Shown one piece after another: positions 15,424 to 62,909 of a stretch of DNA of 64,000 nt (the first letter of the stretch is position 1; each line of letters starts with the position of its first letter). The stretch comes from Ruditapes philippinarum (Eukaryota): assembly GCF_026571515.1 (NCBI RefSeq), contig NW_026861885.1, forward strand, positions 1 to 64,000, read 5' to 3'. The notes beneath the pieces were generated by a model. The model did not search any database. It saw nothing but the letters and a program-made list of their open reading frames with translations, and was not told the origin of the DNA. A program made the position numbers and the translations under genes.

Positions 15424-18400
15424 ATGTCGACGCAAGGATTTAGGGTAAGTTGTCTCTTTGTATGTAAAAAACGTAACTCATATGTATGATGGTCTAAGGT
15501 TTGAGGCGTATAATATATTTTTAATCAGTAATTTGTAAGATTTATTCAATTAGCAAAAATAGAATCAAATCTGTATATCTGTATAACATATCAGTTACCT
15601 GTATATAAATTATAAAACAATGATATTATTTAATTTCGTATACATGCATTAGTTACAGATATTACTGATAAAAGTAATTATAGGCAATAAAATTCCAACT
15701 TAATCATATAATAATCAGTTACATGTATTTCTTAACAAATAAGTATATCAATTGTTTCGAACTTTAATCTTATTTTACTTAAAATTATCGTAGTTACTTT
15801 GTGTTTTTTTTTAAATGTCATGATTTACAAAATGTAAAAAATATTTTCTTTATTTAAGCTTTTTATCAAACATGTGTCATCTTAACGAAAGCACAATCCC
15901 TATACCATGCATAATTTATTTTTACTATTACTACACTTCTTCCTTTTTCAAGACATATTTATTTAGTGTGTTGATGTGTTTCATAGGCTTCATCGGGTGC
16001 TGACTCTCCGAATTCGTGGTTAAAACAGAGCTATGATTCTGGAAGTCGCTCACAAAATTTCGTTGATGATGAAGATGATCTTATCTCGAGGAAATCAAGG
16101 TATTTGTTTGTATTTATTATTGCTATGTGAAACGAAATCGACAGTTTTGAGAAAAGAGTTTTTTACATGTAGCTTACTAAGAGGACAAAGAAAAAGACAT
16201 TTATATCAAATGTCCAAGAATCTGTAGATACACTGTCACGTTTGTTATACATATATCTTGTATTACAAGGTATCATACTTGCAAATTATTTTGATGAATG
16301 AATTACGCTCACCATCGAGAGACTGTAAAGAATAAAAAGTATTTGACTTACAACAGCTGTGCTTAATTATATTAAGTTGCTCTTTCACTAGATTCAGTTT
16401 TGTTTAAATAATTACTAGTTAAGAAAATAGATATGGTAGCAATTGACATTGTAATCCTTTTTTTACTATATTTAAGACGTTTGAGTATATTCTTTGTATA
16501 ATCTTAGAGAACGTGCTTGGGCGTATGCATATGTTTGTATCATAGGAGAGAATTTCCCCCTGAAACCCATTGTTTTACTTTTTTCAGACTTCTTTCCAAA
16601 GTAAACAGTTTTCATTTTTCATATAGCCATGTTGTATTTTTAAAACCTTGAGTAAAGTATAGTATTCTGACTGTATATCTGTCTGTCTGTCTGCAAATAT
16701 CACATTTAGTTAAGAACTATAAATTGAAAATTGAAAATAAAATGCCGCGGGTGCAACAAACATCTTCTGTCAGTAGAACATTGGTTGAAACAACTTATTT
16801 ATAGCATAACAGTAATGCAAATATCCATACATAGGTCAGCGGTTATAGTAAAAATACAATTTCTTACGTGATTGATTTCTGCAGTAGGGCAATGAGTATA
16901 GCTCCTTCAGTGAGGAATGCAAGTCCGATCAAACCAAAGAACCCGAGCGGGTCACGTGGTAAACTAGGAGACGTATTAGAAAAGATGCACGAGGGCGTTG
17001 TACTGTCACAGCATGACGTATCAGCTGCTATGAGAGACTATAATCACCTTCTAACGAAATTGGAAGAATTGGAAGCAAAAACGAAAAAGATGAAAGTAAG
17101 TCTTTTTAATGATATTAACGAAGAATTTAAACATAATAGAACATACTGTAAAATGTTCATAGAACACATACCCCAAAATGACTCAGCTAACAAGGTACCC
17201 AGTAATACACGGAACCAAGCAGAGGAAGGCTTATGACTGGAGAAAGGAGTGGTAGGCACGCATCATCTAAAGGCACAATTAGCAATTTAATCAGAAAAAA
17301 ATTATAGGATATACAAATGAACACAATCAAAACGGCTGTAACACTTTTTGGACATAATATTTCAAAAGTTTAACATGCAAATGAAAACACTGCTTGAACA
17401 TTTAACAATGACATAACATGGAAAGTTTAACGTTTCTAAAATGGTACAATGGTTTATAGTTTTTTTCTATAAAAAAAATTTGATAGATCAAGTATCTTGA
17501 TAAAATAATACCATATTATCAATGTTGAAATGATTATATGCATTGGCGAATTCACCATTTAATCTTCTGTAAAAGATGTTATATTTCGTTATAGAACATT
17601 TCATTCTTCTTTCTCACATAACTCATGTGCGTCAAATAAATAGAGGATATTGAATAAGAGAAGGTTCAATACTGAATTTATTGAACGAGTTGAATAATGT
17701 TATTTCATTGATCGAGTTTTATAAATTTAGTTAGAAGTTACACGAATATAATATTCCATTTAACACATATCTAAAATAGAATTATTTACAGTAAATATAA
17801 ACCACTTTTTATTGACGCACTTATAGTGCGACACATTTACGCTATGTCTGTTAAATGCAAATGACGCACACGACAGTACAATACCATATTTAGGGAGTCG
17901 CGAAAGCGGCACTGGTATGTCATAAAATTCTGTTTTTGCGAAAATCTCTACCGATATCACAAAAAGAATATGAAAACAACGTGAGGGTAAAGTCTGCGAA
18001 CCTTATACATGATTTGAGTTTCTACCTTTTGAAATTTGTATGAGAATAGCATAGGTAAAGGATCTTATATATCTATACAGTTACAAGTATCCGGAGAAGA
18101 GTCTGATGGCATTGCCCCACCAGGTGAATCTAAAATCACACGAGACGAGAAAGACAAGTTACTGGAGCAGATCAAAAGGAAAGACAAATTAATAGCTGAT
18201 TATCAAAGCAGGTAATGGTGTCGACTAATAACATTAAATTAATATTTTGATTAATTAAATAAAGTTGATTACTGAATAGATCTAAATACAGCAGTGGAAT
18301 GCGATCAAAGCGGCTTTTTAATGCCTAGGTGATATTTACAGTATGTGCATATTTCAGTTAAGTTTTATTTTCCATCTACATACATGCATATGAGGTACAT

Positions 18401-21400
18401 TTCATAATATTAAAACAAGTGTACACAGTAAGAAAAACTAGAATACAGCTTATTTACATATGACATTCTGAAGAAGATGAAAAGTTATTATTGTATATCA
18501 CAATATAAAAACAACAACAAAACAAAGCAAGACAAAAGTGCATAGTATCACAAAAATTAAATACTTAAATACTAAAACCTTTATATTCATTAACCTATTA
18601 AGTGTTATTTATAAAACATTTTGTACAGACACTCATGATTAACTTGAATAATATAAAAATTTAAGAATTATCCAAAAGAAAGCGTTTTCATATTTGAAGG
18701 ACTATTGAGGTACTTCGTTTTTATTCTTTACGGAATATTATACTGTAGTAAGAAAATGTAACCCATACCTGCACGTATCCTTTTTGGGATAAGGTTGATT
18801 ACCACTGCATAGGGTTGAATGCCATTTATAAATTATTTATTTGAATAGTCTTTATATAAACGTGTACATAAATGTAGTAATCAATAAGGAATTGAATTCT
18901 AAATATCCGCCAATTTAGAAATTGTATACTCAGGAAACTTAGTTTGAATTACACTTAATAAAATGATAAATAAACCCGGTAGACATTTGTGATTTCGGAA
19001 AAAAATTCAGTACATCTGTTAAACTTTTATCTTATAAAGATTTCAGAGGGTATCACACAAAGCTAAGACAAAGGCAATGAAAAACGTATATGTTGAAGAT
19101 GTCATACCACCTGAAAAGATTATCAACAGCTTTGTGGACTTGTATGAGAAGGAATGGTACCACGCTTATGAAACGCTGAAGTCATCGTGGCACGACGAGG
19201 AGCGAGTCGTGTTTAGTCTGTTCCGAGTTGTCAGAGTAGGTGATTTAATTTTCTCATGTAAAATGGGCGATGAGGGAGATGGGGGGGGGGGGGGTAAGAA
19301 AAGCGGAATTACTGAATACGTGTAAAACGGCTTTTTCCTGTTTTGTGTTGCTCATGAACAAACTCTATAGAAGCGATTCTGCCACTTTCCTAAACTATTT
19401 CTTATATCTGAATTAACAGAATTATGATTAACATTTTGTAAAATTGCTAGTCAATTATTCTCTTTTATAAAAAAATTATATTTTTGAATAAAAAACTATA
19501 TTTCGTGATAAAAATGTTATTGTTGCACCTTCCTTTTCTTTAGGATGACTGCAATTTTATTTACAATTCTTCTTCAGCATGCGTACATATTTTGTTTTGA
19601 CATTGCTGAAACTCAGCGGACAGCTGTTGAAGATTATTCTGCACGATTACAAGAAGTGATGTTGCAGCCAACTTTTACACACCCAATGTCTAAATTGGTA
19701 TTGACATACTTTTCGTGTTCAGTTTGATTATCTAAATTTGTCAAAAGTAGTCCTTAAATGTTATTGAAAATAACTATAGAATACGCTTTACTCCCTTTCA
19801 CCAGTGGAAACATATCGTTTACACTTTTTTAGTAAACTATTAACAAATGAACATGTAATTGGTAATTCGAATTTTATCGATTTTTTTTCAAGAATGTATT
19901 TATGTTTGATTTTTTTAACCTGTCAATTACATACTGATTACACGGTCGATGCACACAGTATATTAATCTTCGGTAGATGTTCGGTTAGTTCCGTGAGATG
20001 TACGCTGTAATTTATTTTTTATCTCTAAACTAAGTGTACTCCGCGCTATAGCGCAATACGGTAAATCACGAGTTTATAATCTAAGTGCCACACGTGTTTT
20101 AAGTTCGAGGCCGCGTTGGTCCATGTTTTTTATTATTAATACTTTCAACATTATTGAATCTATATATGATTATTTTATGTTGTTCGTTTTTTATTGTTTA
20201 CTTAATTTTGTTATGTATATACTCTTTTTAAATAACATGTTTTTTAAGAATTCATGTTTAAAATCAAAACGGATTAAAATCAATAAATGTCTTTTCAATG
20301 CCGCAAAACACACTACAAATCTGTTCCATTAAAATATACTGCAAAAATAAAGAAAGAGTACTAAAACAATGGTAACAGTAAGGATCGAACCACAGACTTC
20401 TCAATTATCAGGCATTCTCTTTACCGACTGTCCTATTGTGAATTAACGAAAACCTTCACATTAAGCTGGCGTGACTTTCAACCCATGACTAATATACTCC
20501 AAATTAATTCACGGACCAAACCGAAGTGGGATCGAATATTTAAATGAGTCCTATAATGTATTCATAATTGACAGGTCAATAAATTCGAGAAATTTTATCT
20601 TTTTGGGAAATTCTATTTTTAGAAATATAAACCCTCAGCAGAAGTTAACACAGAGAACCAACAGTATATACAAATAGGTCAACGACTGCTCAAAGATTAT
20701 AAGAATGTGCTTGTAAGTCAGTCTGTTCCAGCCGTACAGGAGGTAAGAGAAAAAATGAAGAGAAAATAAGAATCCCTAAAGAAAGTCCAAATGGCAAAAT
20801 TGAAAATGTTGCAGGCTCCTGTTCATGGACAGTACTGTCAAGTGCACACCACCGTCCACTCCCCCTAGTACCGGCTTAGGCAAACTTTAACATTTAAATA
20901 TGAAAATGGTGAAATTTTAAATTTAGAAACATATGCAGATGTGTATATACGACGTTTATCATAGAACATTCAATGTGACACTTTCGTGCCATTCCATGAA
21001 AATACTACTTGGTCTCTTTGATGAATTCCAGAACAGACTTCATTGAGGTTTTTGAACATGATGGGTCTGAAAACATTTTTTTTTTCGAAGCTCTAGAACC
21101 ATTTGATGTAGGTCGGGACCATTAACTCGTGTACAAATTTTCAAATCATTCTCTCTCCCCCTTTTTTTGTGTGCACAATGACAAAAAAAATGAAAAGCGT
21201 TCCAATGCTTTTCACTCAAATTATCAGGCTAAGAATCGCACAAAAATCGATATTCATTAATATTCTGGGTACGTTTCCTTTGCAGAGTTTTTCTTTATCA
21301 TATGCTTCACTTTGTAAGAATTTCAAATTCAAATAATCATGCTTAAGATAGTATTGTTATCATTATGACCGTATTGTTTATTAGATGATTAAGTAACATG

Positions 21401-22237
21401 TTCCATAAAATGAAAATATATAGTTTTATTATAACTTACATAAACCCTTTACTGTATAGCCTTATGTGACATCGCATGGTTTTATTTTTATCTATCATCC
21501 TGGATGGTCAATATTTTTTTGCAATATTCCCAAGGGGCGAGTTATCTATATAGATGTTCTTGTTATCTCCCCTGATAAGAAGTATTTAATGCATATCGGG
21601 TGTAATTTGAATTACAACAAAGTAAAATGAAAATTGCAGACTCGGTTTAATCGATTATGTCAGTGAGTGCAACATCCCTCACGCTCCTCAGCAACGGTTT
21701 GAGCGGCACTTAAAAGTGCTGGAATACCCTTAGTCCTTAGGTAAATTAATCATATATTGAATACGTATCTTATTAAATAAGAACTGAATTTAAATATGCA
21801 GATAGGTTTGTCCATTTTAATCATTATCTATGATTCTTGCCCACATGCAAACTATCCGGCTGCTGGGTTTATAAACCAAACATGTACTTCAATAAACATT
21901 ACTAATATCTGTAAGGTTTTATTATTTTCGTTTTCAGCTGTTTCGTAAAGTAAAACTTCCAGAATTATTTGACAGCGGGTTTGTGAACAAAATAGTAAGA
22001 GACTTTGTGAATCGAACAGTTGAGTTGATTTGGTTGATGGTCGTGCAAGAGCCTCCGATGATGGTTTATTGGCTCGAACCCAAACAGACCGTTGTGAAGG
22101 AATATTTCAAGTTTTACAAAGAGAAAAGAGCGTTAGTGAGACAGACTGTATGGCCGGCTGTATTTCATAAAGAAGGCGGGGCGTTGCTAAGCAAAGGTGT
22201 TGTCATGGCGGGAAGTGCAGAAGATTTTGCTGACTGA
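15424..22237 (+). CDS. Gene A: Mieap (mitochondria-eating protein) C-terminal-domain-like protein, about 403 aa, 8 coding exons
   Basis: Exons 15424-15444, 15987-16099, 16885-17095, 18081-18211, 19040-19235, 19578-19697, 20623-20742, 21938-22237; phase-consistent (1212 nt). Motifs FVDLYEKEWYHAYE and ELIWLMVVQEPPM..VRQTVWPAV..GALLSKGVV. The first two exons are less certain. Confidence 0.8.
20770..20850 (+). repeat. Dispersed repeat family R2
   Basis: AATCCCTAAAGAAAGTCCAAA..GGCAAAA..GAAAATGTT..CCTGTTCATG..GTACTGTCAAGTGC recurs at about 57007-57097. Confidence 0.7.
21625..21745 (-). repeat. Dispersed repeat family R1, inverted copy in the last intron of gene A
   Basis: TGCAGACTCGGTTTAAT..GTGCAACATCCCTCAC is the reverse complement of the 13100 and 62060 copies. 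Confidence 0.7.
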
Positions 22238-22759: not shown

Positions 22760-25700
22760 TTAATGTAAGTGAGCCACGCCTTTCTCCATTAGCGGTCCAT
22801 TTTTGTGCAAAAACAACGCTGGCCAAACGCAATTCTGCACGGCATTTCCGCTCCTGGTAAATGGCTTGAAGAGACTTGTTGGTCTGTCCCCTTTATTACA
22901 GAATTCAAGATGCATGGGATTGGCCTGGGTACACATCATCCATATTACTTCTATACAACGATCTATGAACGCTACTTGTGAATTCGTTGGCCGTTGAGCT
23001 GGATGAATTGTTTTCAGAATGTCTTCATAGAATAGCTGTAATCAGTTACCAAATTTGTTATATGTAAGCGCTTAAAGAATTCCATAAAAGCTATTTAATT
23101 GTATTCATATACCCAATAATAATATTTATAACTACTCATGACTACTTAGTTAATCATATACTATTTCATTTAATTATTATCTTACATTTACCCACTATGC
23201 TTATCAACAAATATTCTATTTTGCGCATGTATTGTTTACACACCAAAAATAAAACAAACGACAAGAACGTATATATGCGTACAAAAACTATCATTTACAT
23301 ATACATAACATATAAACGACTATATAACTTAATCAAGCATATTCGTAAAACAATTGAATCTCTCGGCTTACCCATTTGACAACGGGTAATGATGCAACAG
23401 ATGCATACTTTCTGAAGTCTCTCAGCATTGCATCATTTTCTCGGACAATAGCAATGAGTTGACGATCAGGTCTTACTTGCGCCTCTAAAGCTGCCTGAAA
23501 TCAGCAAAATTGCAAATTTGTACATCCTTGAGTTTTGCATATAAAGCATGTAGAACAAGTGGGATATTGTTTATTTTTTATTGCTCATCTGATTAAAAAA
23601 AAAATAAACATTTTAAAAATAAACACCTCATGCGTACATTTAATCGTACTAAACGAGCAGTCAGTGATAAAAACACCACAGTTTAACATGATGATAGGTT
23701 ATAAAATAAGGGCGTCCGTGGTCGAGTGGAAAAGTTCATTGACTTTAAACCACGCATTTGTCCCTTACCGCTTAAGGTTCGAAACCCGCCAGAATCCCGC
23801 CAGGGATTTTAGATTATTTCATGCGATGAAGCTGTCAAGCTTCTATACGAAACGTCGGTGGTTCTACTCAGGTGCCCGCTCGTGCCTGCACAGAGAGACA
23901 CCTGAGGTGTTCCTTCACTCCATCAGTAAAGCTGGAAAGTATGACCTCTACTGTGTTGGTGCGACGTAAAGCCATTTCAGCAAACACAATTTCACAACCT
24001 AGACAACCTTTAACTTTACATAATCAAATTGATAAAAAATATAAATACAAATAAGCAAACTTCAGTATAATATACAAAATACATACACGCGAAATTTGTT
24101 AATAATCCATATTTACCCTAGACTGTTGTGAAATGTTGGGATAAAGCATTTCGTTTTCTGTATGCATCATTATGTTCACTATCTGTCTCTCTGCCGTGTT
24201 TCCACAATAATCATACGCACTCTAAATTCAACAATAATATCAATTGAAAATAAATATATTATTATTATTGATGGAATTATTTATATACTACTTTTATAAT
24301 TCTTAAGTTGTACGAAACCAAACCAACATTAAAAGACTTAATATTAGCTTAAATATTACGCCTTTTAGAATATATGACAGTCACAAAGATAGCAAATAAT
24401 TATATAAACATTATATCAGTAATTTCGGGGATGCTTCAAAATTCAGTTTTTTTTTTACTCTCGTTCTTTTTAGTCAAATGGTCACATATCTTGAAGACAA
24501 TACAAAAACACGGTCATTTCGAATACGGGTAGAGTCACTAAATCATCTCTTCAGTTTTCATTTCATAGCCTTGGTCAAGCAAGATTCAAGAAATATAAAG
24601 TCAATATTTTTGGTCGACCTTTTGCGTTATCGCCCGAAATATATTTATGCCTAAAGATAAAACAAATAATTTTCCACTTTTTAAGTTAATATGAAAATAG
24701 TCCTCTATTTACATTTGTGAAAGTTTTGAATATTTTGGCTCTTTTCGAACTTTTCTACATAATACATTCGTCAATAGATTGAAAGGTATGATATACGGAG
24801 TCTGACAAAGTTAGACTGAACTATACGAGTGTTTGATTCACTGAAAACATAGAAGTTGCTGAAGCGATTTTTATAGTACCTTTATTATCTTAGTGAGATG
24901 TTGTATGGTTTCGTTTGGATCCCTGTACATTTGCTGAAGTTCCTCGTATGCTGCAGTCCACTCTCTGTTATATAGCTCATTGAACATATCAGCCACGTGC
25001 TTCGGGCTAGTTACCTCCTCTAAATCTGTCGCTTTTCCATTGCGCAATCTCTCGGACGCCAGTTGACTCAGACTGATATAATTAATCGATTGTTAAATCA
25101 ATGTACATAACAACACTCTTCGTTTTATATTACCATTTAAAAATTATATCGTATTAACCCTAAGACACAATTAATCAAACGTCAATTGTCTTAAAGACAG
25201 TATTTTCGTAAAGAAAATAAGATTGAAATTTAAATAGAACCCTTTGATATTACTTTCTATTATTTGGTAACCTAAAGTGTTCCATGAATGGGAAGTGAAA
25301 CCGTAAGTTGCTTTCTTTTCCATTAAAGGTGGCCTTTCAAACTGATTTAAAGATATAGCTGACTATTTATCAGACTCGCTTTCTCTCAAACATGGTCTGT
25401 TATTTATTATCATTATAATTTATATGTTAAAAATGTATATGACTAAGCAGCCGGTGCAGGGTATAGGACTAAGCAGCCTGTGCAAGGGGGCGTGAGGGAT
25501 TTTGAACTTTTTCTTTAACCCTCATGTACAGTCTCAATCTAACCGATTCTGCAATTTTCATCAGCCTTCTTTAGGATTTTTTAACAGGCCATGGTGATGA
25601 TGCTTTAGATAAAGCAGCTGCAGCATACCAGTTCTTATCATTATGCTGATGATATGTCATTAAGACATTTTTGGATATTAAATAAGTGTTTTAAACACCT

Positions 25701-27038
25701 TGATCATGTTTACTTGCTTGAAATTTTCTCTACTACTTACTGATCGCTGACTTGCTTTGGGTCATCACGTCGCCTCAACTCATATCTATCATAATCCGAC
25801 GGTGTGGCCGAGTAACTGGGCTCGACGGTTCGTCGGTCACGGTGTTCGAACTGACTCTCCATTCGCCGTCGGTTATAGGCTCTCTCACTCTCTTCTGTAT
25901 GCTGTGGAGGATAACCCCTGTCAGTAGGTGTATTTCTTTTGGAGGGTTTATCAATACTTGGGGTCACTGACGCCTACATTAAAAACATCACATTATTAAT
26001 CATAACGATAAAACACTTTATCTAAGTAGGCGAAAAACAAAATAACTAAAATTTGCAATATTTTAATATTACCATTATTAAAGCTATTTATCATAATGCT
26101 CACAACAGCGACAAGTACGAATATCAAAGAGAATATTTGTAATAATTATCTATTTTAGTGGAAAAAAAACTCGCATTTTCTTTTATTAAATAAATACTCA
26201 ACTTTAAAAGATACTTTAATATTAAAAAAACACATCATAATACAAATGATGAATATGTTACTACGATACTATCTGCATAATTATTTGAATACAAAATAAT
26301 TTTATAATAAAATGCGTCAGTTGTCTCGAAAGTCAAACATGTTTATCTGTGGTTCACACAAAAGCACAAGTATTTCAACACATCATACCGGTTTTTTCGT
26401 GAAGTAACCGATCAATTCCTCAAGCTCCTGTCGTGCTGTCGGCATTAAACCATTAGTTCTGGCGTTCCGTAGCTCAGTCCAGTTTCCGCGCTCAGCCATT
26501 GACAACAGCTTTGAGAACGAGTCGGTCTTCGCACCAACTCCTGGACAATAGATGAAAATAAAGACTTAGTTATTACTCACTCAGACACTCATAATTATTG
26601 AAATAAATGGTCTGGGCATTATGCTACATAAAGCATTATTGTCGATGATCATTTGAAAAGCATTTCAGTAAGCCAGCCTGATAGCTCCTGACATAAAAGA
26701 ACCCGAAATCTTTGACTAGATCTAAATACACAGGAAAATGTGATTTGAAGTCGGTAACCTAACCAATACGGTCTTAGAGGCCCCGGCCTGAAAAGAACTT
26801 TCTTTCATCCATCATTCTTATGAAAACCCAAATTCCATCATTCTAATGAAAATGCCAAAAGATTTGATTATACAAAATATTGATAACTTTCTCTACCATT
26901 GTTATATTTGATCATCTCTGTGTGCATGCTCTCCACAGCACGTGTAGCAGCTTTAACGTTTCCACGTGTTAGTTCACTGTGATCTAACTCTTCCATTGCG
27001 TTGAGCACACGCATTACTGAACCTACGCGTTCCTCCAT
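22760..27038 (-). CDS. Gene B: Mieap C-terminal-domain-like protein, about 407 aa, 7 coding exons, opposite strand
   Basis: Minus-strand exons 27038-26897, 26540-26389, 25973-25741, 25072-24880, 24221-24117, 23494-23372, 23035-22760; all GT-AG and phase-consistent (1224 nt). LSQLASERLRNG..DL..FNELYNREWTAAYEEL; MLRDFRK; FIDRCIEVIWMMCTQANPM..FTRSGNAVQNCVWPALFLHKNGPLMEKGVA. Confidence 0.85.
23709..23975 (+). mobile_element. tRNA-derived SINE in an intron of gene B
   Basis: A-box-like GTGGTCGAGTGG and B-box GGTTCGAAACC, body GGTGGTTCTACTCAGGTGCCCGCTCGTGCCTG..CACCTGAGGT..AAAGCTGGAAA..TATGACCT..TGTGTTGGTGCGACG; second copy at 32778-33010. Confidence 0.8.
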
Positions 27039-30512: not shown

Positions 30513-30621
30513 TTTTACCTCATTAATTAATTAGAAAACATATTTCACCCTAATACTATATGTGTTTTTTACCTCATTAATTAATTAGAAAACATATTTC
30601 ACCCTAATACTATATGTGTTT
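30513..30621. repeat. 54-bp direct tandem duplication abutting a splice acceptor
   Basis: TTTTACCTCATTAATTAATTAGAAAACATATTTCACCCTAATACTATATGTGTT twice, then TCAG|G at 30624. Confidence 0.9.
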
Positions 30622-33700: not shown

Positions 33701-34171
33701 CCTCGGCCACTTGTGGAGGTAATCATTACTATTGTTTTATGATGGAAAAAAGTTTTCACCTAAATGATCATGTTTCTTTTAATTACTCTTTAAAATCCAA
33801 TATATATGTTCAATAGATGCCTAGATAGAAAACAAGAAAAAGAAAATAAACCATTAAAAAAAAGTTTTAAATTTTTTCAGATATTTGAAAAGTGCTACAT
33901 GGAGAAGATACAACAAGCCTGGAAAATTTCATCTTATAATGCAGACATTAGAACGTTCGTCTCCAAATGTGTTGAAATTATATGGCTTATGAAAATACAA
34001 AGTCCTCCCATGGAGTTACTATGGCAACAAAGTGGTGATCCTTGTGACAAAGATAGATTCGCGTTTTACACTAAAAAAGGTGAAAAGGTGGAACGATGTG
34101 TTTGGCCAGCAGTCATATTGCATGCTGGTAATGGACCATTAGTATCTAAAGGTGTTATACAAGGCATTTAA
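30707..34171 (+). CDS. Gene C: Mieap C-terminal-domain-like protein, about 325 aa, 6 coding exons
   Basis: Exons 30707-30862, 31486-31586, 32018-32219, 33104-33214, 33602-33718, 33881-34171 (978 nt). RLSSIAGQKMTEGNSDIADLSDPFRPT..MYDDTWTQAYE; LLKEFRKS; CVEIIWLMKIQSPPM..YTKKG..VWPAV..GPLVSKGVIQG. Confidence 0.9.
32778..33010 (+). mobile_element. tRNA-derived SINE, degenerate copy in an intron of gene C
   Basis: GGGGCCTCTTTGGCAGAGTGGTTAAAG head; GGAGGGGCACCTGAGGTCTTCCTTCACCAGTAAAGCTGGAAA..TATGACCTC..GTTGGTGCAACG matches the 23709 copy. Confidence 0.75.
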
Positions 34172-34489: not shown

Positions 34490-34521
<32 letters not shown>

Positions 34522-40100: not shown

Positions 40101-40247
40101 TGGCAGAAGTGTGGTGAACCGGTTGACAAAGAAAGATTCACTTTCTATACAAAAAGAGGGAATACAATTAAACAAACAGTATGGCCTGCAGTGTTACTTC
40201 ATGAATCCGGACCTCTGATGTCGAAAGGTGTCGTTCAAGCACAATAA
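37109..40247 (+). CDS. Gene D: Mieap C-terminal-domain-like protein, about 335 aa, 6 coding exons
   Basis: Exons 37109-37303, 37916-38013, 38426-38624, 39024-39140, 39564-39674, 39960-40247 (1008 nt). RLSTLAGHKMMDGNPDIADLSDPFRPTKLAEEF..YDDDW; DLRKS; [42 protein letters not shown]. Confidence 0.9.
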
Positions 40248-45000: not shown

Positions 45001-45232
45001 TTCAAGGGAAACTGACGCTTTTGTAGCTAAAACATTTGAAATAGTATGGCTGATGAAAATTCAAAATCCGCAAATGGAAACACAATGGCAGTCACAAGAT
45101 GAAAAGTGCGACAAAGATAAATTTACTTTCTACACAAAAAGGGGAGATATTGTCAGCCAAACAGTATGGCCGGCTGTGTTACTGCACAAGAATGGCCCTT
45201 TGATGTCAAAAGGGATATTACAAGCAAAATAA
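42070..45232 (+). CDS. Gene E: Mieap C-terminal-domain-like protein, about 343 aa, 6 coding exons (closest to D)
   Basis: Exons 42070-42291, 42972-43069, 43539-43737, 44058-44171, 44474-44584, 44945-45232 (1032 nt). Exon sizes 98/199/111/288 are identical to gene D. An assembly gap lies in intron 1. Confidence 0.88.
42417..42750. other. (GGTA/GGTG)n microsatellite running into an assembly gap (N at 42482-42750)
   Basis: Read directly from the sequence. Confidence 0.95.
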
Positions 45233-51300: not shown

Positions 51301-54300
51301 AAACGAATTGAGGAATAGGTAATGGTACTTAAAACATCCTTGTATTTGTTCAAACAGCTACCCGTTAAATTTATGAAAATTGCATATTTTTACATGAAAG
51401 GTAAGTTTATTTAAAAATGTAGCAGTGTAATGTTAATAAACTTTAAAATTTTGGGTATTTCAGGGTCATTATGGCAAGATCTAGGTTATTATGCAATTTT
51501 GGCCGCCTTGCTACTCGGCATTATTTTTCCATAATAGGCGAGTGAATGAGCGCTCAAGCAGAATGACGTCATCAACTCTCAGTGACTTTCAAGATGGTTG
51601 CTGACGTTGAATGGACTGTAGTCATTTGCACATAAATGACATAAAATTAATCACAATCAGCAATCACAATGCCTCTTAAAATTAATGATTTATAAACTCA
51701 AGACAATACATGACCATCAGAAATTCCAAAAATGATTTCAGATTGACAGTAGGAAAAAGATCGGATCGGTGGCATTTAGACTCGGACATCAGTCTCAGAA
51801 ACCGTTCTTGAAGGCACAAAACTTCATAAAAAACTGGCAATAAATCTTAATGTAATTCTTACAAAAATGTAAAGAATAGGATACTGTATTTATCAATAAA
51901 AAAACAACATTTTCTAATATTTATTTTGTGTTGTCATGTTTTCAAGTTAATCGGAGAGTTAAGCTGGATGAGACAAATATTTGTTTATATTGACAACTGT
52001 CCGTTTCTTAGAAAGGGCGACAACCAAGATTAGCAGCGTTGTCTAAGACATAGGTATTAAAGACGTTAATACTTGTTTGCTGCTCGCCATTATGCGATAA
52101 TGGCCCTCGAGTTCATAATGCCCTTCGGGCCTGCGGCCCTCAGGCCATTATGTACATCTTCGGGTCATTATCGCATAATGGCGAGCAGCAACCAAGTATT
52201 AACCTCTAAATTATATCACGTATGAATTAAAGTATTTGAATCAAAAGTTGATTTTGCATTGAAGGGACAAAACAACGTTAGGAGAAAATTTTGAGAAATT
52301 AATCTTTCCAGTTTTCTACTGGCTTCAATATCAAATATAGACAACATAATGCATCGCAAAACTTCTCTGCGTCTGTCGTATTAAGAGCCTGCTAAATAAA
52401 ACAGAGGAGAATCATCCAATAATGCAGTATGCTGTTTCTAGGCTGAGTGTTTTGGCTGGACACAAATTAACGGATGGAAACCCTGCAATAGCAGATCTTA
52501 GTGATCCATTTAGACCAACAAATATTGCGGAGCAATTTAGACAACTTTACGATGACGAGTGGACATGTGCTTTCGAAGAACTTGGAGTATCATTTGAAAG
52601 AGATGAAGAAATAATTGACTTCTTAGCTTGTATAATCAAGGTTTGTGTGCGCCGCAATATGTTGATTAATATTGTGTCTTGTATTTATTCTCTTTGTATA
52701 AAGATATGAATGTAGAGTTCTTCATTTTTAGTATGTTTTTAATATAAAAAATACTAAGAATCAACAATAAACACTATTGGGTCAGATCCGGCGCTATAAT
52801 CATTTGCATAGATAGTTTAACATAATCTTCCTTGGGAAAAGCTTAATTTTTATATTTACATGCATGTACACTGATTCCTACGATTTATCTTTTTAGGGAT
52901 GCAAAATTATTTACATTATATAAATATCAATCTCTATATATGTTGATTGTAGGATATTGATCGGTTTTGTATCAGAGCAGGCTCTCAGCAATTGGAACAC
53001 CTGAAGTATTTTGCGAAACTTGTTATACAAGATCCGGAATATCAGCCAGACGCAAAAGAGGAAAAGGGGAATAAGGTGCTGGTATGTACATGTATAATTT
53101 TCAAATTTATTTAATTTATTTAATTCATGTGTGTTGATTTTTATTATTGTTAAATATATCCGTAAAGAAATTAATACAGTGGTAAACAATTTTTCTTATC
53201 TTCCTATTTTTCTGGTTCAGTATATGATAATTTAATGATGTTATAATTGAGATGAACTTCATTTCTGTGTTAAATCATGTTGTCATTGCCAGATATTTAA
53301 GAAGATCGAGTATGAGAATGAACAAAAACAAAAGCGGTAAAATAACAACATCCATTAAAATATGTCTAGTTAAATGACATTATCACAAAATTTTAATAAT
53401 TTGACAAAAACAAACTTCTTTAAAAATAATAAATAAATTCATTCATACAATTTTCATTTACTAATATCTTAAGAAATATTCATGAATAAAATATATATCA
53501 CAAATTGACATATTGTGGAGTTTGTGTTATCATTGAAGAAACCATTTGAGGCTTTAAGTAGTGCATAGAGAATACAAAGGGATGAATAATATTCTCACTG
53601 TCATTTTTTTTTTCATTGGCTTGATCCAGAAATGTGACCAGATAATTCCTATGACCAGGGCACAAGAAGAGCTTGCAGACAAAATGCTTAAAGACTTTAG
53701 AAAGTCTCTTGGGATGATATCAAAGACTCCGCTTTTGGTGGTAATGCGTCTTATTTTTACAAAAAGAGATTGTATACTATCTGCAAAATTGTACAAATAC
53801 TCATTCTTAAATTGATAAATTAATACTTGAGTATAAATCAATCAATATGGCTGTATGTATTAAGAAATTAATGAATAGCAATACATATTATTTTTGTAGA
53901 TAAGATTTTACTTTTATTTAGTTCAACGTTTTTATGTTGTACGACATTATTGTTCGGAAACTTTTATCTTGCACTGCAATAACATACTGCAAATTTTATT
54001 ACTTTACGTGCAATGCTAACTTTGTAGAAGAGAACGAAGAAAGTTACTTAATTTATTTTATTACAAGTAATGATATTTTTATTTGATATGTATATATGTG
54101 AAATTTTGTCTTTATGTTCTTACATTTTTTAACCACAAAAAAAAACCCATTTCACCCAGAATCATTTTGCATTTACCACTGTTTTAAATATGTTTTGTTT
54201 GATTAGAAGAAATGTTTTTGAGCATTGCTCTACATGTGCATCTAAGACTGGTGTTAAGTATATTATGTATTATTTTTTTCACATACAGATTTTTCGCCAA

Positions 54301-54570
54301 GCTTCTAAATCGATCAAAGACAAAATAGGGCCTAAACCTCCGAAAGGATTGGAAGATTTCTTAGAGAAAGCTTTTGAACTTATCTGGGTCATGAAGATGC
54401 AAGATCCAGCAATGGAGTTTGTTTGGAGTAAACCTGGTGACAACTTTGATAAGAATATGTACACACATTATACTAAACGAGGAAGCAAGGTTGCTCAGTG
54501 CATTTGGCCAGCCATCGTCCTTCATAAAGCCGGACCGTTGATGTCAAAAGGTGTTGTGCAAGGAAATTAA
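48374..54570 (+). CDS. Gene F: Mieap C-terminal-domain-like protein with long coiled coil, about 511 aa, 8 coding exons
   Basis: Exons 48374-48526, 49846-49992, 50599-51003, 51209-51318, 52442-52640, 52953-53081, 53630-53740, 54289-54570 (1536 nt). E/K/Q/L-rich heptad region, then [27 protein letters not shown] and [49 protein letters not shown]. Confidence 0.87.
48638..48707. repeat. 35-bp tandem duplication in intron 1 of gene F
   Basis: CTTGTGCAATG.CCATGCTTTGTCGCACAGGACAA twice. Confidence 0.9.
52061..52207. repeat. Long near-perfect hairpin, end of an intronic non-autonomous element (about 51460-52210)
   Basis: GTTAATACTTG.TTGCTGCTCGCCATTATGCGATAATG.CCC pairs with GGG.CATTATCGCATAATGGCGAGCAGCAA.CAAGTATTAAC around a GGGCCTGCGGCCC apex. 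Related CATTATG / CATAAT..GGCGAG words occur at 51462-51545. Confidence 0.8.
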
Positions 54571-55645: not shown

Positions 55646-55935
55646 ATTACATTGTCAAATTAGCAATAATAAAGAAAGCAAAGGGATTGCTAGTATTATC
55701 TTATACACTACCAATTATTTTCTCTGCAAGTGTGGATAAGGAAACGATTCCCAACAGCTTCATTTCGCAAACTATTCTTGCCATTAAAACCTGACCGAAT
55801 GAAATTCTCATCTTCTGTTCTCAAGATATATTTCATTTCATTTAATTCATTATAAGCATTCTCGAATAAGTTTGATATTTTCAAACATTTACTTTAACTT
55901 TCAACTGTTCATATATCTTGACCTTTATCATTATC

Positions 55936-56140
55936 AGTAACCAATGAACGAGCATCTAAATATGATATTTCTATCTCTTTCCCTTTCTCTGCCATCACAG
56001 TAAGTAAACCCCATAAAAATGCCAGTCAATGGGTATGCTCTGGAGTGCGGGTAACTAATACATGCACTCCAGTTAACGCACTGTGCATGTATATGTATAC
56101 GATTTAACTCTGACAAATTTTAAACAGAAAGGTCCCCAGA
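55936..56140 (-). repeat. Inverted partial copy of element R3
   Basis: Reverse complement of about 28385-28590. Confidence 0.8.
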
Positions 56141-57561: not shown

Positions 57562-60500
57562 ATGTGTGATGCAATTTCGACGAAACGTGATAGTGTGGCT
57601 GAATTACTCACACAACTAAAAAGAGGGAATACAATTACGGATAATGAATTGAAGGACGCAGTTGCTTATCACCAGTCCTTTGTTATGGAGCTTCAATCAT
57701 ACAAAGATATCGCCGACTTTAACCATGCAACACCAGTAAGTCCTTTCATGTTTGTTAAAAATAACATCCCTATGGCGCAGGATATCAATTCAATGAATTA
57801 CGAATATACTGTTTTCCAACCAGAAGGCTATTTTTTTCTCTCTATATATATCATATTAATCCCTATAAAGTTTGCTTGTCAAGAACCACATAGAAGATGC
57901 TTTGATAAGTAATACATTGGGATAATGTGTCTAAAAGGAACTAATGCTTTGCGGAAATATGTATATCATAACAATGTTTTAGCACGACGAAGCGTATTTG
58001 TAATCTTCGCCTAAGTCATTATCTTTGGTAATTTTGGAACATTGGAATAAATAGAAATTAAAAAAAAAATGGTATTTTTCTTTAGAAAGCGGATTGCAGA
58101 CAGAAAGACATACAACATGAATTAGATGATCTAAAAAAGGAGCATCAGATTTTGGGTCAAGAATTGAAATATTATCGTGACCAAGCAAAGCATGCGGAAC
58201 AGACAAATGCCGAATCTCTAGGAAACCAAAGACATTTGGTATAAAAATTATCTCGTTATATATGTTTCAGATGTCAGTTATTATCGCGGTGTTTTATAAT
58301 ATCTTGTACATTTATCAACTTTTTATTCAATTATATAAAGAAAAAGACATTACTAATTGTTTGATTGTGACAAATCTCAAGTTCTCTGGTTAACGGAGAG
58401 ACGCATTTTGTTAACGGTGATAAAACTAATATTGTCCGTGTTTTTATTTGCTTTGAGACAAAAACAATAATCTCGTAAACTAATATTTCAATGGCAAAAT
58501 TGTGTATTAGTTGTGTAATCATATTATAAATGTGTGCCACAGTAAATTATGTTACAGACCAAAGGTAAAGAAGATCATGAGAATGTTAAAAGAATGTCCG
58601 AACATCTGACAGCTAAATTGAGAGAGTCCGAAACAGAGATTAAAAAATGTAAGTGTGCGTTGAATAAGCTTCAAGCAGAAAATGATGAGGCAAAAAATGA
58701 GATCAAAAGACTTACATTAGAACGCAATAAAGCAGTAAATGAGCCAGAAAAAGGTGAAGTATTGACAGAGCTTGAAGCCAGCAAGAACGCGTGTAGAAAA
58801 CTCCAGGATGAGCTACATCAGCTAAAACTGGATCATAGTAAGGTACTTAAAAACTTTTATGATTACAAGAACACTGGGTTTGAAAGAAAAGCGACAAATG
58901 AAAATAAATATGACGAGAAAAAGAAAAACTTGGTTATACACAAGTCTCTAAAATAAAATTGCATAGTCACATTTACATTCATTCTTTATATAATTTACAG
59001 GCATTTGATTTGAACAGAATATACCATTAAAACTATTGAGTCACTTTCTATTTAGCCGTTCGAAAAGAAATTCCACATTCTAAAGTAAATTTCAATCTAA
59101 AAGACTATCGTTTTTATTGGATTAAAAGATACATGTACAGTTTATATTTCAAATTGCAAAACAGCCAAATTGAATATGCAACATTTATGAAAATGACTTT
59201 TATTAATTACTTATCGTTTCCAACGTCAAAATTAGTTTCATATTTAACATGTTAAGAGTCAAGATAAAGGACAGTCGAAAGCACTGGAAAAACTACGACA
59301 ACAAAACGATCAACTTAACGAAGATAATAAGAAGCTTATGGGACAAATGCATGAATTAAGAAACAGGTTCGTACCTTAATATTCTTTGACTTTAATGCAA
59401 ACAAAAACGATTTTATCTCTTTCGCCTGAACACCCAAACAATTTTCAAGCTTCTGTAATCCGTGCTCTTATTTTTGAGCTCTGTAATTTATTTGATGAAT
59501 GAATTTAAAGAGATTAACCTTCTTACATGTGCTAAAATTACTGCAAATCAACTATATGACCTTTTATGCATGCTAAACATCTGATTTCATTGATATTTTT
59601 CATTGCTGATTTTCGAACAAACTTGTTATTAAACGATAAACTAAGCAATGTATTCATTTTTTAATTCAGATGCTTAATTATGTGCGCTTATAACTCAGTT
59701 GAATTATCAAAACGTATTATAAAGATAGTATCTATACATAAGAGAGCAAGCACAAATCAATTATACAAATATATTGCATACTTTGTTGCCATTTTTATAA
59801 AAAAAAATTGTGAAAATACTGATTACGGAGAAGCTTTTTAATCTACTCAATCCGTAAAATTATTTGAATGTACTTAATTAAGTATATAAATGACAAGATT
59901 ACAAATAAGCTATTGTTAAAAGATATCCTTTGCTCAAAATTGATATTAAAAATTGCTACACAGTCTCTTCGTAAATATAAAATAAACATGTTTGACTTCA
60001 CACAAAGACTATTTAGTAGGTATGTTATGTCTAAAATTATACACACCATGTTTGGTCACAATATGAATATACAGGATCTTTATTTAAGAAAGGACCCACT
60101 TTATTTGTCCCATAATAGGGAACACAGTTTCCCATACCTAGTTTATTCATTCTTTTATTCAAATTAGACTTATGTAGATTTCAATAAATTTCTTTGATTA
60201 AAATATTTACTCAACGATGAGAATAGTATATCTTTAAACAAAACATCTGAATACAATGTCAGTCATGATACTGTTTATTTTAGGCTAAGCGTGATAGCTG
60301 GACACAAACTTACAGACGGGAATCCTGGGATAGCAGATCTAAGTGATGCATTTAGACCAACAAAGATTGCCGAACATTTTAGACAACTTTACGATAACGA
60401 ATGGACACGAGCTTTTGAGGAACATGAAGTAAAGTTCAAACATGAAGAAGAAATAATAGACTTCTTGGCTGGTATACTCAAGGTGTGTGTGTGTGGTGCA

Positions 60501-62909
60501 TTCATGGTTATTTTTATTGATATATCATAATTCTCATGTTAGTTTGAATTGATGAATAACTCAGTTTTGAATTTTTAACACTCCGTTAATAAGTTTGAGT
60601 TTTCAAAAGCAAGATATTAATGTTCAACAGCGAACAGCATATAATCAGATTACTTTATATCACTTTAAACTATTAAACTTATTGTCATTCGTATAAAGTT
60701 TAATATATGCTTCCGTTGTCAGTGTGTAAATTCTGGACAATCGGTCAGCAATGAACATAAGAAAAGACACTTAATGTTTTAAACGCATTTTATATATTTA
60801 TAAACGCATTTTATATATCTATAAATGGAGTTTACATATTTGTAAACGCTTTATGTTTCGACGTTTACAGGATATAGATCGGTTTTGCGCCAGAGCCGGG
60901 TCGCAGCAATTAGAAAACCTTAAGTTTTCTGCGAAAAGTATTATTCGAGATCCTGAGTATCAGCCGGATGCAATAGGAGAAAGAAAGGATAAGATTTTGG
61001 TTTGTATATTTCTATATGGTGTTCTTGCTTTTTTTAAGAATTTGCATTCTGTGGCTTACAAATACCGGCTTTTCTTTTCTTTTTATTTACTGTTAATATG
61101 AAAATTTTATGTTATAATACAAATGTATCTGTGTTAATGAAGTCTTGTTTTATTGGATGATATTTAATAACATCAAGTCTTAGGATGAAATAAAATAAAG
61201 TGTGGAGTAAAATCGAACCAAATAAATGCATAAAGTAGTACAAGTAGTGTAAAGTAAATTCAAAGGGATAAAAAATATCCTTCATTGTTATTATCTTCTT
61301 AACGTAAATGGTAGAGTGTTTTAATACCAATTAAAACTTATATACTGAATATGTTCTGTTTTTTGTTGTTGTTTTTTTTTGGTTTTTTTTTATTTTGTTT
61401 TTTTAATGAATTGTTCCTTTTGGGTTGATAGTTTGTAAAAGTAGGAGTAACTGTGATCTTTTCATGTATGTGACCAGAAATGTACCAATTCAGCTTGCAT
61501 GACCAGTGCCCAAGAAGAACTTGCAGACAAACTACTCAAAGACTTTAGAAAGTCTCTTGGAATGATATCAAAGGCACCGCTTTTGATGGTAATTGTATCA
61601 AATTTAATTCTATTCATTATGTATTGCTACATGCTATATAAAAATCTTTTCATGCGTTTGACGTGATAAATGAAAGATATTCATACAAAACGCAGAGGAA
61701 TTTACTGTAGTTTTGGTCCTTCGGGGTCACTATTAAGTGTTGAGAATTTAGAACCGCTAAAGCCGGTGCTAGGGGGCCTGAGGGATGTAGCACGTTTTCA
61801 ATATCCATCATGTACATACTCATCAAACCGAGTCTTCTATTTTCTTGTAATTTTGTTGTGAATAATGCTTCCGAGCGATAACTTTGTTTCCAATATTTTT
61901 ATACTTCACAACAGCAGGTGTCAAGTGCTGTGTTGCAGCTGTAAAAAGTTGCCTGACCTCACGTCAGTGTTGTTATATTTTTTTGATCCTTCGGGATCAT
62001 TGATGCAAGCACTATTAAGTGTTGAGAATTCAGTACCGTTCAAGCCGGTGCTAGGGGCGTGAGGGATGTTGCACGTATTCATTATCCCTCATGTACAGAC
62101 TCAATCAAACCGAGTCTGCATTTCTCTTGTAATTTTGTTGCGATTAATGCTTGCGAGGGATCACTTTGTTTCCAGTTTTTTAGTATCGTCAGTGACTTTT
62201 TTAAGACTTCTATTTAAGGCAGTGAAAATTATAAACATTTTGAAACTTCTACGATTTTATTGCAGTAAGTGATGAATGAAATGCAATATTTTCGAATTTA
62301 TTTTGTAAGTGAACTTCAGACACAATTAATAAATACAACTTAATTTCGTATGGTCAATTATGAAAATCATTAGTAAATGATAATTGAAAGGAAAAAATTC
62401 GACCTATTCTATGATTGAAAATTGCCAACCAATAAGTACAAGCTTATTTTTGGAAGTTAAAAGGATTAAAAAAAGATAGCATTGTTCATCGAATTAATTG
62501 AAAGCAGTGCAGTGTTGTCCATGCTATTGATTGCGTAGGGGTAGTATTCTTTGAGCGTTGCTTTTATTTGCTTCTAAGTAATAAATAAGTGTACTAGTAT
62601 CATTTATTTCATCTTAATGTCTTACAGATTTTTCGCCAAGTTTCTCCACTGATCAAAGACAAAATAGGGTCTACAGCTTCTGATGGGTTATATGATTTCT
62701 TAGAGAAAGCTTTTGAACTTATCTGGGTCATGAAAATGCAAGATCCACCAATGGAGTTTGTTTGGAGTAAACCTGGTGACAACTTTGATAAGAATATGTA
62801 CACACATTATACTAGACGAGGAAGCAAGGTTTCTCAATGCATTTGGCCAGCAGTTGTCCTCCATAAAGCTGGGCCATTAATGTCAAAAGGTGTTGTGCAA
62901 GGAAATTAA
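57562..62909 (+). CDS. Gene G: Mieap C-terminal-domain-like protein with coiled coil, about 459 aa, 7 coding exons (closest to F)
   Basis: Exons 57562-57735, 58558-58932 (alternative in-phase donor at 58842), 59257-59366, 60284-60482, 60871-60999, 61478-61588, 62628-62909. The last five exon sizes (110/199/129/111/282) equal those of gene F. The last exon is missing from the ORF track and ends [12 protein letters not shown]. Confidence 0.87.
61712..62140 (+). repeat. Two tandem copies of repeat family R1 in the last intron of gene G
   Basis: TCCTTCGGG.TCA..CTATTAAGTGTTGAGAATT.AG.ACCG...AAGCCGGTGCTAGGGG..TGAGGGATGT.GCACGT twice, about 280 bp apart. Confidence 0.8.

What the first reader, a model, noticed from the sequence alone, without database searches (positions are those of the whole stretch)
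15424..62909. Tandem array of seven intact, diversified Mieap-C-domain-like genes
Seen: seven genes can be spliced with canonical junctions and no internal stops. All share a four-exon core with the same intron phases (2,0,0,0) and similar sizes (193-202, 105-129, 111-123, 276-300 nt), and the motifs (L/I/M/V)Y..(E/D/T)W..(A/S)(F/Y)E, (D/E)(F/L/Y)(R/K)(K/N) and E.(I/V)W.M..Q..(P/A/Q)M...WPA......G.L..KG. Established: this C-terminus resembles the MIEAP domain (Pfam PF16026) of vertebrate SPATA18, a single-copy p53-inducible mitochondrial quality-control gene. Inference: a lineage-specific birth-and-death expansion with a conserved effector domain and variable N-termini, a pattern common in invertebrate immune and stress families. 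Nested relatedness is (F,G), (D,E), C, then the distant A and B. I know of no functional description of such a cluster.
Basis: partly seen in the sequence, partly recalled or inferred. Interest (0 to 1): 0.85.

Follow-up and report, generated by a model that had tools for sequence, protein, structure and literature searches.

The report
Seven-gene MIEAP-domain cluster in a clam
This stretch of bivalve (clam) DNA holds seven intact, diverged genes ending in the 'mitochondria-eating protein' (MIEAP) domain; they are ordinary members of a family already known to be hugely expanded in bivalves, and its function there is still untested.

Summary
Seven genes can be spliced with GT..AG junctions only and no internal stop. 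Six lie on the + strand and one (B) on the - strand. Every last exon passes Pfam PF16026 (MIEAP).

The assembly gap (42482-42750) lies inside intron 1 of gene E. A transcript contig splices across it and keeps the frame. Junctions of D and E have transcript support; those of A, B, C, F and G do not.

The copies are old and under purifying selection, so they are not assembly duplicates within the window. They belong to three deep subfamilies; A and B group with proteins from outside this genome.

This is not a rarity. The same genome has at least 150 such last exons, and Regan et al. 2021 reported about 53 Mieap genes per bivalve. This scan also noted similar arrays on other DNA of this genome.

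Likely role: intracellular coiled-coil scaffolds with a conserved C-terminal binding domain, acting in mitochondrial or protein quality control. In two models of homologues from other bivalves the domain resembles GrpE most closely, but only moderately. No HSPA12 gene lies on this contig, and a docking test gave no verdict.

The parts
16892..22237 (+). Gene A, 356 aa model. Exons 16892-17095, 18081-18211, 19040-19235 (c1), 19578-19697 (c2), 20623-20742 (c3), 21938-22237 (c4).
   Evidence: ATG to TGA, no internal stop, all junctions GT..AG. c4 hits PF16026 at 44.7 bits. Exons were placed with the help of homologue P0025. No transcript evidence.
15424..15444 (+).
   Evidence: ATG followed by a strong GTAAGT donor at 15445. 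Splicing to the best acceptor (exon start 16885) meets TAG immediately. The main ATG at 16892 follows 7 nt later. Unverified by RNA.
22760..27038 (-). Gene B on the minus strand, 410 aa model. Exons 27038-26888, 26540-26389, 25973-25741, 25072-24880 (c1), 24221-24117 (c2), 23494-23372 (c3), 23035-22760 (c4).
   Evidence: All seven exons are collinear with P0021 (403 aa). Core is 62% identical to the P0021 group. c4 scores 32 bits on PF16026. No transcript evidence.
30707..34171 (+). Gene C, 325 aa model. Exons 30707-30862, 31486-31586, 32018-32219 (c1), 33104-33214 (c2), 33602-33718 (c3), 33881-34171 (c4).
   Evidence: c4 hits PF16026 at 45.2 bits and c1 at E 0.005 to profile positions 1-46. 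No transcript evidence.
37109..40247 (+). Gene D, 335 aa model. Exons 37109-37303, 37916-38013, 38426-38624 (c1), 39024-39140 (c2), 39564-39674 (c3), 39960-40247 (c4). The 3' UTR reaches about 40726.
   Evidence: The 39674|39960 junction is seen in contigs of two runs. The 192 unaligned letters of contig record 3 equal what the c1|c2|c3 model predicts. Core is 69% identical to Mercenaria XP_053399565.1. c4 scores 52.2 bits on PF16026.
42070..45232 (+). Gene E, 343 aa model. Exons 42070-42291, 42972-43069, 43539-43737 (c1), 44058-44171 (c2), 44474-44584 (c3), 44945-45232 (c4).
   Evidence: One 361-nt transcript contig of run X2 joins 42291|42972 and 43069|43539. c4 scores 34.5 bits on PF16026.
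42482..42750 (.). Assembly gap (N) inside intron 1 of gene E. Its left flank is a (GGTA)n-like microsatellite.
   Evidence: The intron is spliced out (GT..AG) and the frame is kept: exon 1 has 222 nt (phase 0) and exon 2 has 98 nt. D has the same two exons with a 612-nt intron and no extra exon. The gap was not filled or looked up.
48374..54570 (+). Gene F, 472 aa model. Exons 48374-48526, 49846-49992, 50716-51003, 51209-51318, 52442-52640 (c1), 52953-53081 (c2), 53630-53740 (c3), 54289-54570 (c4).
   Evidence: The core exons are conserved with G at the DNA level (76-85%). The N-terminal exons were chosen by phase, splice score and size match with G, so they are less certain. c4 scores 39.2 bits on PF16026. 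No transcript evidence.
57562..62909 (+). Gene G, 480 aa model. Exons 57562-57735, 58086-58238, 58558-58842, 59257-59366, 60284-60482 (c1), 60871-60999 (c2), 61478-61588 (c3), 62628-62909 (c4).
   Evidence: Core is 79% identical to F, with dN/dS 0.24. c4 scores 38.2 bits on PF16026. No transcript evidence.

Best explanation
This is a 46-kb cluster of seven separate, intact protein-coding genes of the MIEAP-domain family (Pfam PF16026). It is one of many such clusters in a bivalve genome that carries at least 150 copies.

Each gene encodes a soluble intracellular protein of 325-480 residues. There is no signal peptide and no membrane segment. The N-terminal part is variable, strongly charged and probably coiled-coil. 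The C-terminal part, about 235 residues from four exons with fixed phases, is the conserved MIEAP domain.

The cluster grew by tandem duplication over a very long time. It holds three deep subfamilies: A, B and C-G. The youngest pair is F/G. The copies are kept by purifying selection.

Likely mechanism (inferred, not shown). As in vertebrate Mieap/SPATA18, the hydrophilic coiled-coil half would drive self-association and recruit clients. The structured C-terminal domain would bind one conserved partner. Its most conserved residues lie in the last helix and the small beta-sheet domain encoded by the last exon. That partner is either a mitochondrial acidic lipid such as cardiolipin, as reported for human Mieap, or a protein. 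The variable N-termini would give each paralogue its own clients or location. The overall role would be mitochondrial or protein quality control in a stress-exposed animal.

My odds: family membership and intactness about 0.95; a Mieap-like quality-control scaffold role about 0.4-0.5.
For: Identity. All seven last exons pass the PF16026 cut-off. The c1 exons of A, C, D and F (four of the five I scanned) give weak hits to profile positions 1-48. Full-length database homologues that are 46-69% identical to the cores of A, B and D match PF16026 over positions 1-194.

Intactness. Models have no stops and only GT..AG junctions. All motifs are present in all seven.

Transcription. Spliced contigs exist for D and E.

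Selection and age. dN/dS is 0.24 for F-G at dS 0.53. Synonymous sites are saturated for the other pairs.

Family size. At least 143-150 matching exons in this genome. 1370 clusters at 50% identity in the public library. The published expansion is in PMC8382680.

Architecture. N-terminal GRAVY is -0.8 to -1.3 with 35-42% charged residues; the core is -0.3 to -0.5; no hydrophobic 19-residue stretch looks like a membrane segment. AlphaFold models of two homologues show long N-terminal helices followed by a confident helical plus beta domain, with pLDDT above 90. The human Mieap layout (hydrophilic coiled-coil/IDR half; hydrophobic structured C-half needed for mitochondrial condensates and cardiolipin interaction) is described in PMC10845071. 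Bivalve MIEAP-like products are over-expressed in mussel gill (PMC5549309), and proteins annotated as SPATA18 change in abundance with cadmium in Dreissena (PMC11036304).
Against: No experiment on any expanded bivalve paralogue is known to me or was found. The window genes are not the SPATA18 orthologue: another locus in the genome (C6225) scores 90.9 bits on PF16026, against 31-52 bits here. Transferring function from human Mieap is therefore weak. No p53 or heat-shock elements are enriched. Junctions of A, B, C, F and G have no transcript support. The N-terminal exons of A, C, F and G rest on splice scores and paralogue comparison only.
Confidence: 0.75

Rival explanations
1. The MIEAP domain is a GrpE-like module. 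These proteins would act as nucleotide-exchange factors or co-chaperones for the atypical Hsp70s (HSPA12 type) that are expanded in bivalves alongside them.
For: Two AlphaFold models of family members only 27% identical to each other were searched: P0004 (D/E type) and P0025 (A type). Against 48,161 PDB representatives, both gave the same three GrpE chains as ranks 1-3. Scores were 1dkg_B Z 7.0 and 6.8, 4ani_A Z 7.0 and 6.5, and human GrpEL1 9bls_B Z 6.7 and 6.5, covering 133-148 of 151-161 GrpE residues. Foldseek also listed several GrpE chains among its weak top hits.

Both families are greatly expanded in bivalves: Hsp70 OG10 at 68.1 per bivalve and Mieap OG24 at 53.1 (PMC8382680). HSPA12 has no known partner or function (PMC13580251).

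Among the HSPA12-like loci that were scored, three lie 11-31 kb from a MIEAP last exon, on C6085, C9370 and C4942. My rough expectation by chance is about 0.2-0.6. Earlier notes of this scan report HSPA12 genes inside MIEAP arrays elsewhere in this genome. Those notes are leads, not evidence.
Against: Z of 6.5-7 lies in the range the tool itself calls middling, and rmsd is 4-9 A. The MIEAP domain has about 80 more helical residues than GrpE. There is no sequence-level link: no PF01025 hit and no GrpE in a profile search of PDB sequences. No HSPA12 or Hsp70 gene lies anywhere on this 152-kb contig. None of the HSPA12-type contigs found by the Pfam HSP70 search overlaps a MIEAP contig. Published work on human Mieap does not mention Hsp70. 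Both families sit in duplication-prone regions, which could produce proximity without any function.
Confidence: 0.15
2. This is a diversifying immune or stress effector family. The variable N-termini would recognise pathogens or damage signals, and the MIEAP domain would execute a common response.
For: Large copy number in tandem arrays with variable N-termini. Related products respond to cadmium and are gill-enriched in other bivalves.
Against: No signal peptide, membrane segment or known recognition domain. The core is under purifying selection. Positive selection on the N-termini was not tested. No infection data were found.
Confidence: 0.08
3. The copies are pseudogenes or assembly duplicates with no function.
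For: A second copy of the D-E pair sits on contig C8964 at 88-95% identity, introns included. It may be an uncollapsed haplotype.
Against: Within the window the copies differ by 21-76% at the protein level, and synonymous sites are saturated for all pairs but F-G. All seven are open. D and E are spliced in transcript contigs.
Confidence: 0.02

Closest known systems
Bivalve Mieap gene-family expansion (orthogroup OG24 of Regan et al. 2021, Genome Biol Evol, PMC8382680)
   Same: Same Pfam domain, same kind of animal and the same phenomenon: tens of copies per genome with duplications dating back to the bivalve ancestor. The window cluster is a local sample of it. Subfamilies A and B group with proteins from outside this genome.
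   Different: As far as I read it, that paper reports counts and trees only. Exon structure, cluster anatomy, selection and fold are worked out here, for this locus.
Vertebrate Mieap / SPATA18 (p53-inducible mitochondrial quality-control protein that forms cardiolipin-containing condensates; PMC3022033, PMC10845071)
   Same: C-terminal MIEAP domain, PF16026. Bipartite layout with a hydrophilic coiled-coil N-half and a less hydrophilic structured C-half. No signal peptide.
   Different: SPATA18 is single-copy and 538 aa. The window genes are seven of at least 150 paralogues, are shorter (325-480 aa), and score much lower on the Pfam model (31-52 bits) than another locus in this genome that is the likelier orthologue (90.9 bits). 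No p53 element was detected. Localisation and lipid binding are untested.
GrpE / GrpEL1 (nucleotide-exchange factor of DnaK and mitochondrial Hsp70; PDB 1DKG, 4ANI, 9BLS)
   Same: Overall architecture in the predicted models: a long helix, a helical bundle, then a small C-terminal beta-sheet domain. GrpE is the top structural match for two divergent family members.
   Different: No detectable sequence similarity. Extra helices are present. Z is only 6.5-7. Hsp70 binding is not shown. This is a resemblance, not membership.

Membership tests
Pfam PF16026 (MIEAP domain family) | HMM match above the curated gathering score (27 bits) | tested here: met
   The seven last exons alone score 31.3-52.2 bits.
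Pfam PF16026 (MIEAP domain family) | Match over the whole domain (profile positions 1-195), not only its end | tested here: inconclusive
Exon-by-exon searches give positions 115-194 (c4, significant) and 1-48 (c1 of A, C, D and F, E 0.005-0.17; c1 of G gave none). The short c2 and c3 exons of D give nothing on their own. Homologues P0004, P0021 and P0025, which are 46-69% identical to the cores of D, B and A, match positions 1-194.
Pfam PF16026 (MIEAP domain family) | Architecture: N-terminal coiled-coil or disordered half plus C-terminal domain at the very end of the protein | tested here: met
   The domain ends at the stop codon in all seven. The N-terminal parts are 35-42% charged with GRAVY of -0.8 to -1.3. 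Models of the homologues show long helices.
SPATA18 / Mieap orthologue (single-copy, p53-inducible) | One-to-one orthology with vertebrate SPATA18 | tested here: not met
   At least 150 paralogous last exons exist in the genome. Locus C6225 scores 90.9 bits on PF16026, against 52 bits at most for the window copies.
SPATA18 / Mieap orthologue (single-copy, p53-inducible) | p53 response element near the gene | tested here: inconclusive
   The consensus scan gave 2 matches with 2 mismatches each, against 1.8 expected by chance. Neither lies at a gene start. The bivalve p53 site preference is assumed, not known.
SPATA18 / Mieap orthologue (single-copy, p53-inducible) | Mitochondrial condensates and cardiolipin binding through the C-terminal half | not testable with these tools
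   Needs cell imaging and lipid-binding assays (PMC10845071 describes them for the human protein).
GrpE (Pfam PF01025) nucleotide-exchange factors | Sequence or profile match to GrpE | tested here: not met
   No PF01025 hit for exons or homologues. A profile of 25 family members finds no GrpE among PDB sequences at E up to 10.
GrpE (Pfam PF01025) nucleotide-exchange factors | GrpE fold: long helix, helical bundle, C-terminal beta domain | tested here: inconclusive
   GrpE chains rank 1-3 of 48,161 for two models, at Z 6.5-7.0, rmsd 4.1-8.8 A and 133-148 aligned residues. Foldseek E-values are all above 0.1.
GrpE (Pfam PF01025) nucleotide-exchange factors | Binds an Hsp70 nucleotide-binding domain | tested here: inconclusive
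   One complex prediction returned no verdict. This is not evidence either way.

The most novel reading that the evidence does not exclude
The MIEAP domain is a previously unrecognised GrpE-like fold. The expanded bivalve MIEAP proteins, this cluster included, would then be dedicated exchange factors or adaptors for the equally expanded and functionally unknown HSPA12-type Hsp70s, forming a co-amplified chaperone and co-chaperone system. If so, vertebrate Mieap/SPATA18 might also act through an Hsp70.
Probability: 0.15. Interest if true: 0.8.

Novelty: new member of a known kind. Interest (0 to 1): 0.3.

Why it matters
As a gene cluster this is ordinary. It documents, exon by exon, one locus of a bivalve gene-family expansion that is already published, and this scan has met the same thing elsewhere in the same genome.

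Its use is as a clean, well-resolved example. It has seven intact paralogues of three ancient subfamilies, fixed intron phases and partial transcript support. That makes it a good starting point for choosing constructs.

The open question is what more than 150 MIEAP-domain proteins do in a clam. The moderate but repeatable resemblance of the domain to GrpE gives a cheap, testable hypothesis: binding to Hsp70 or HSPA12, set against binding to cardiolipin. It would matter for bivalve stress biology, and also for the poorly understood human tumour-suppressor effector Mieap.

Tried and rejected
- Complex prediction. I tested the HSPA12 nucleotide-binding domain (L011, residues 110-570) against P0004 residues 74-342. 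The result was no verdict, score 0.00. It counts neither for nor against binding. The pair was cross-species and probably not cognate.
- Foldseek against PDB with the P0004 model found nothing at E below 0.1.
- A profile of 25 family members against PDB sequences found only coiled-coil noise.
- Pfam on the c2 and c3 exons of D found nothing, because they are too short.
- A small HMM of the c3 exons did not find c3 in gene A. It was then found by aligning P0025.
- Scans for heat-shock elements and p53 response elements gave counts equal to chance.
- The Pfam HSP70 search of the genome found about 20 HSPA12-type loci. None lies on a MIEAP contig.
- Only the more sensitive protein search gave three co-located pairs.
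- tblastn of HSPA12 against the whole 152-kb contig found nothing.
- Pfam on eight flanking or intergenic ORFs of the window found nothing.
- Literature searches for a functional study of bivalve MIEAP paralogues, or for a Mieap-GrpE link, found none.
- F and G were compared at the DNA level to find N-terminal exons. Only the core exons are conserved.
The gap was not filled. The part of contig C8964 that would correspond to the gap was deliberately not fetched.


Full report
**What is there**

The window is AT-rich (about 32% G+C) eukaryotic DNA. It is the first 64 kb of a 152-kb contig in a 1.41-Gb assembly.

tblastn with the translated last exons and first core exons finds exactly seven copies of each. 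Six are on the + strand. One, gene B, is on the - strand and convergent with gene A.

Acceptor and donor sites at homologous positions give seven gene models. Each starts with ATG, ends at a stop codon, has no internal stop and uses only GT..AG introns. Sizes are A 356 aa, B 410, C 325, D 335, E 343, F 472 and G 480.

The N-terminal parts differ:
- A, C, D and E have two exons.
- B has three.
- F and G have four.

D and E rest on homology to a 342-aa Mercenaria protein, P0004. B rests on P0021, and A partly on P0025. The N-termini of C, F and G rest on phase, splice score and comparison between paralogues, so they are provisional.

The first supported start is 16892.

The joined coding sequences were built only inside local scripts from the window file. 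They were used for frame checks, identity, dN/dS, motifs and a tree. Those tools were given single exons by reference, or database homologues by id.

**The gap**

The N run at 42482-42750 is flanked on the left by a (GGTA)n-like microsatellite. It lies between the first coding exon of E (42070-42291) and the second (42972-43069).

One 361-nt contig of run X2 joins 42291|42972 and 43069|43539 with GT..AG ends and one mismatch. Both flanks therefore belong to one transcript, the gap is spliced out, and the frame is kept (222 nt, then 98 nt, then a phase-2 intron).

D has the same two exons with a 612-nt intron. P0004 aligns across the junction without missing residues, so a hidden exon is unlikely.

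The run's label 'RNA' is a guess by the tool. The spliced form itself is the evidence.

**Transcripts**

- The 39674|39960 junction of D is seen in contigs of two runs, and the 3' UTR reaches about 40726.
- In the 1609-nt D contig, the 192 letters between c3 and the part that cross-matches E's c1 equal the 76 + 117 - 1 letters predicted by my c1|c2|c3 model. This supports those two junctions indirectly (my arithmetic).
- Raw-read depth was very low in the two RNA runs sampled.

**Family**

All seven last exons pass the PF16026 cut-off. The c1 exons of A, C, D and F give weak hits to the start of the model, while that of G gave none.

Full-length homologues match PF16026 over positions 1-194. 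One of them, from Sinanodonta woodiana, is named 'Mitochondria-eating protein C-terminal domain-containing protein' by its source.

A profile of the seven last exons finds 1370 clusters at 50% identity in the public library. It finds at least 150 exons on more than 70 contigs of this genome, mostly open and often in runs on one contig. No further copy lies on the rest of this contig.

The expansion is published. Regan et al. 2021 list a Mieap orthogroup of 807 genes, 53.1 per bivalve against 0.6 in other animals, with duplications in the bivalve ancestor.

Two earlier notes of this scan describe similar arrays on other pieces of this genome. One of them calls the animal a Manila clam, which I did not verify. 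The nearest named homologue I found is from the hard clam Mercenaria.

**History of the cluster**

Core identities are F-G 79%, D-E 58%, C about 44% to D-G, and A and B 24-29% to all.

In a quick maximum-likelihood tree of 65 domains:
- A pairs with the Sinanodonta protein (support 99).
- B pairs with the P0021 group (100).
- D and E pair with Mercenaria P0004 (99).
- F pairs with G (100).
- C-G fall in one clade together with other proteins (84).

The array therefore holds three deep subfamilies, and only part of it is a younger local expansion.

dN/dS is 0.24 for F-G at dS 0.53. Other pairs are saturated at synonymous sites while dN stays at 0.3-1.0. The copies are old and constrained, not assembly duplicates.

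A separate contig, C8964, carries a second D-E pair at 88-95% identity, introns included. It is either the other haplotype or a recent segmental duplicate.

**What the proteins look like**

None has a signal peptide or a membrane-like segment. The N-terminal parts are very hydrophilic and charged, and the core less so. This is the bipartite layout described for human Mieap.

AlphaFold models of P0004 (pLDDT 86) and P0025 (domain pLDDT above 90) show long N-terminal helices. These are followed by a helical domain that ends in a small beta-sheet domain encoded by the last exon. The invariant residues of the family (W, G, W, L, G, G) all lie in that last-exon part.

**Fold comparison**

Foldseek finds nothing significant. 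An exhaustive structural alignment against 48,161 PDB representatives puts the same three GrpE chains at ranks 1-3 for both models. They come from E. coli, Geobacillus and human GrpEL1, score Z 6.5-7.0 and cover about 90% of GrpE.

The tool warns that Z below 8 can reflect a common arrangement, rmsd is high, and there is no sequence link. I therefore treat this as a repeatable but moderate resemblance.

That note is a lead and not independent proof.

**Link to HSPA12**

HSPA12-type Hsp70s are also hugely expanded in this genome, with 993 first-look candidates, and in bivalves generally.

Among the loci that were scored, three lie 11-31 kb from a MIEAP exon. This is more than my rough chance estimate. 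However, none lies on this contig, and a docking prediction gave no verdict.

**Verdict**

The cluster is a typical member of a known bivalve expansion.

The function is unknown experimentally. The best-supported reading is a coiled-coil scaffold with a conserved C-terminal binding domain acting in mitochondrial or protein quality control. The GrpE-like co-chaperone idea is the interesting minority reading.

Noticed in passing
G000:C8964:1337-3746 and 8891-9175 (another contig of the same assembly): A second copy of the D-E gene pair at 88-95% DNA identity to window 38400-40700, introns included, with a roughly 105-nt inverted piece. It is either an uncollapsed haplotype or a recent segmental duplicate. 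The stretch that would correspond to the window's gap was deliberately not fetched.
   Followed up: partly
window 40188-41960 (between genes D and E): Reads of the paired RNA run X21 lie here with the first mate on the + strand, whereas over the exons of E the first mate lies on the - strand. At 41819 there are loose ends rich in A. This may be an antisense or repeat-derived transcript. Depth is very low.
   Followed up: no
window 4362-5838 and 14797-15117; window 28352-28724 and 55912-56148: Repeated segments that match each other on both strands, with 60-96% identity between translated pieces. They are probably copies of transposable elements. The second pair sits in the B-C and F-G intergenic regions.
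   Followed up: no
window 55347-55637; also 41603-41727 and 30513-30621: Tandem repeats in intergenic DNA: an 82-nt unit repeated 3.6 times, a 63-nt unit repeated twice, and a 54-nt unit repeated twice (the last with 100% matches).
   Followed up: no
contig C10372 beyond the window: 114734-116762 and 125840-126892 (loci L007, L008): Open reading frames that match Pfam IgGFc_binding (PF17517, 70-74 bits). This is a different multi-copy gene downstream of the MIEAP cluster. There is also an 853-aa ORF at 107271-109829 with no Pfam match, and a retroelement endonuclease ORF near 145.4-145.9 kb.
   Followed up: partly
G000:C6225:104566-108284 (locus L001): The best PF16026 match in the genome: the last exon scores 90.9 bits, and a first-exon match lies 3.5 kb upstream. 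It is probably the true SPATA18/Mieap orthologue, distinct from the expanded paralogues.
   Followed up: no
G000:C6085:126198-138651; C9370:135796-160698; C4942:41023-73374: HSPA12-like open frames lie 11, 24 and 31 kb from MIEAP last exons. At least the C6085 pair is head-to-head. The HSPA12-like family gives 993 first-look candidates in this genome.
   Followed up: partly
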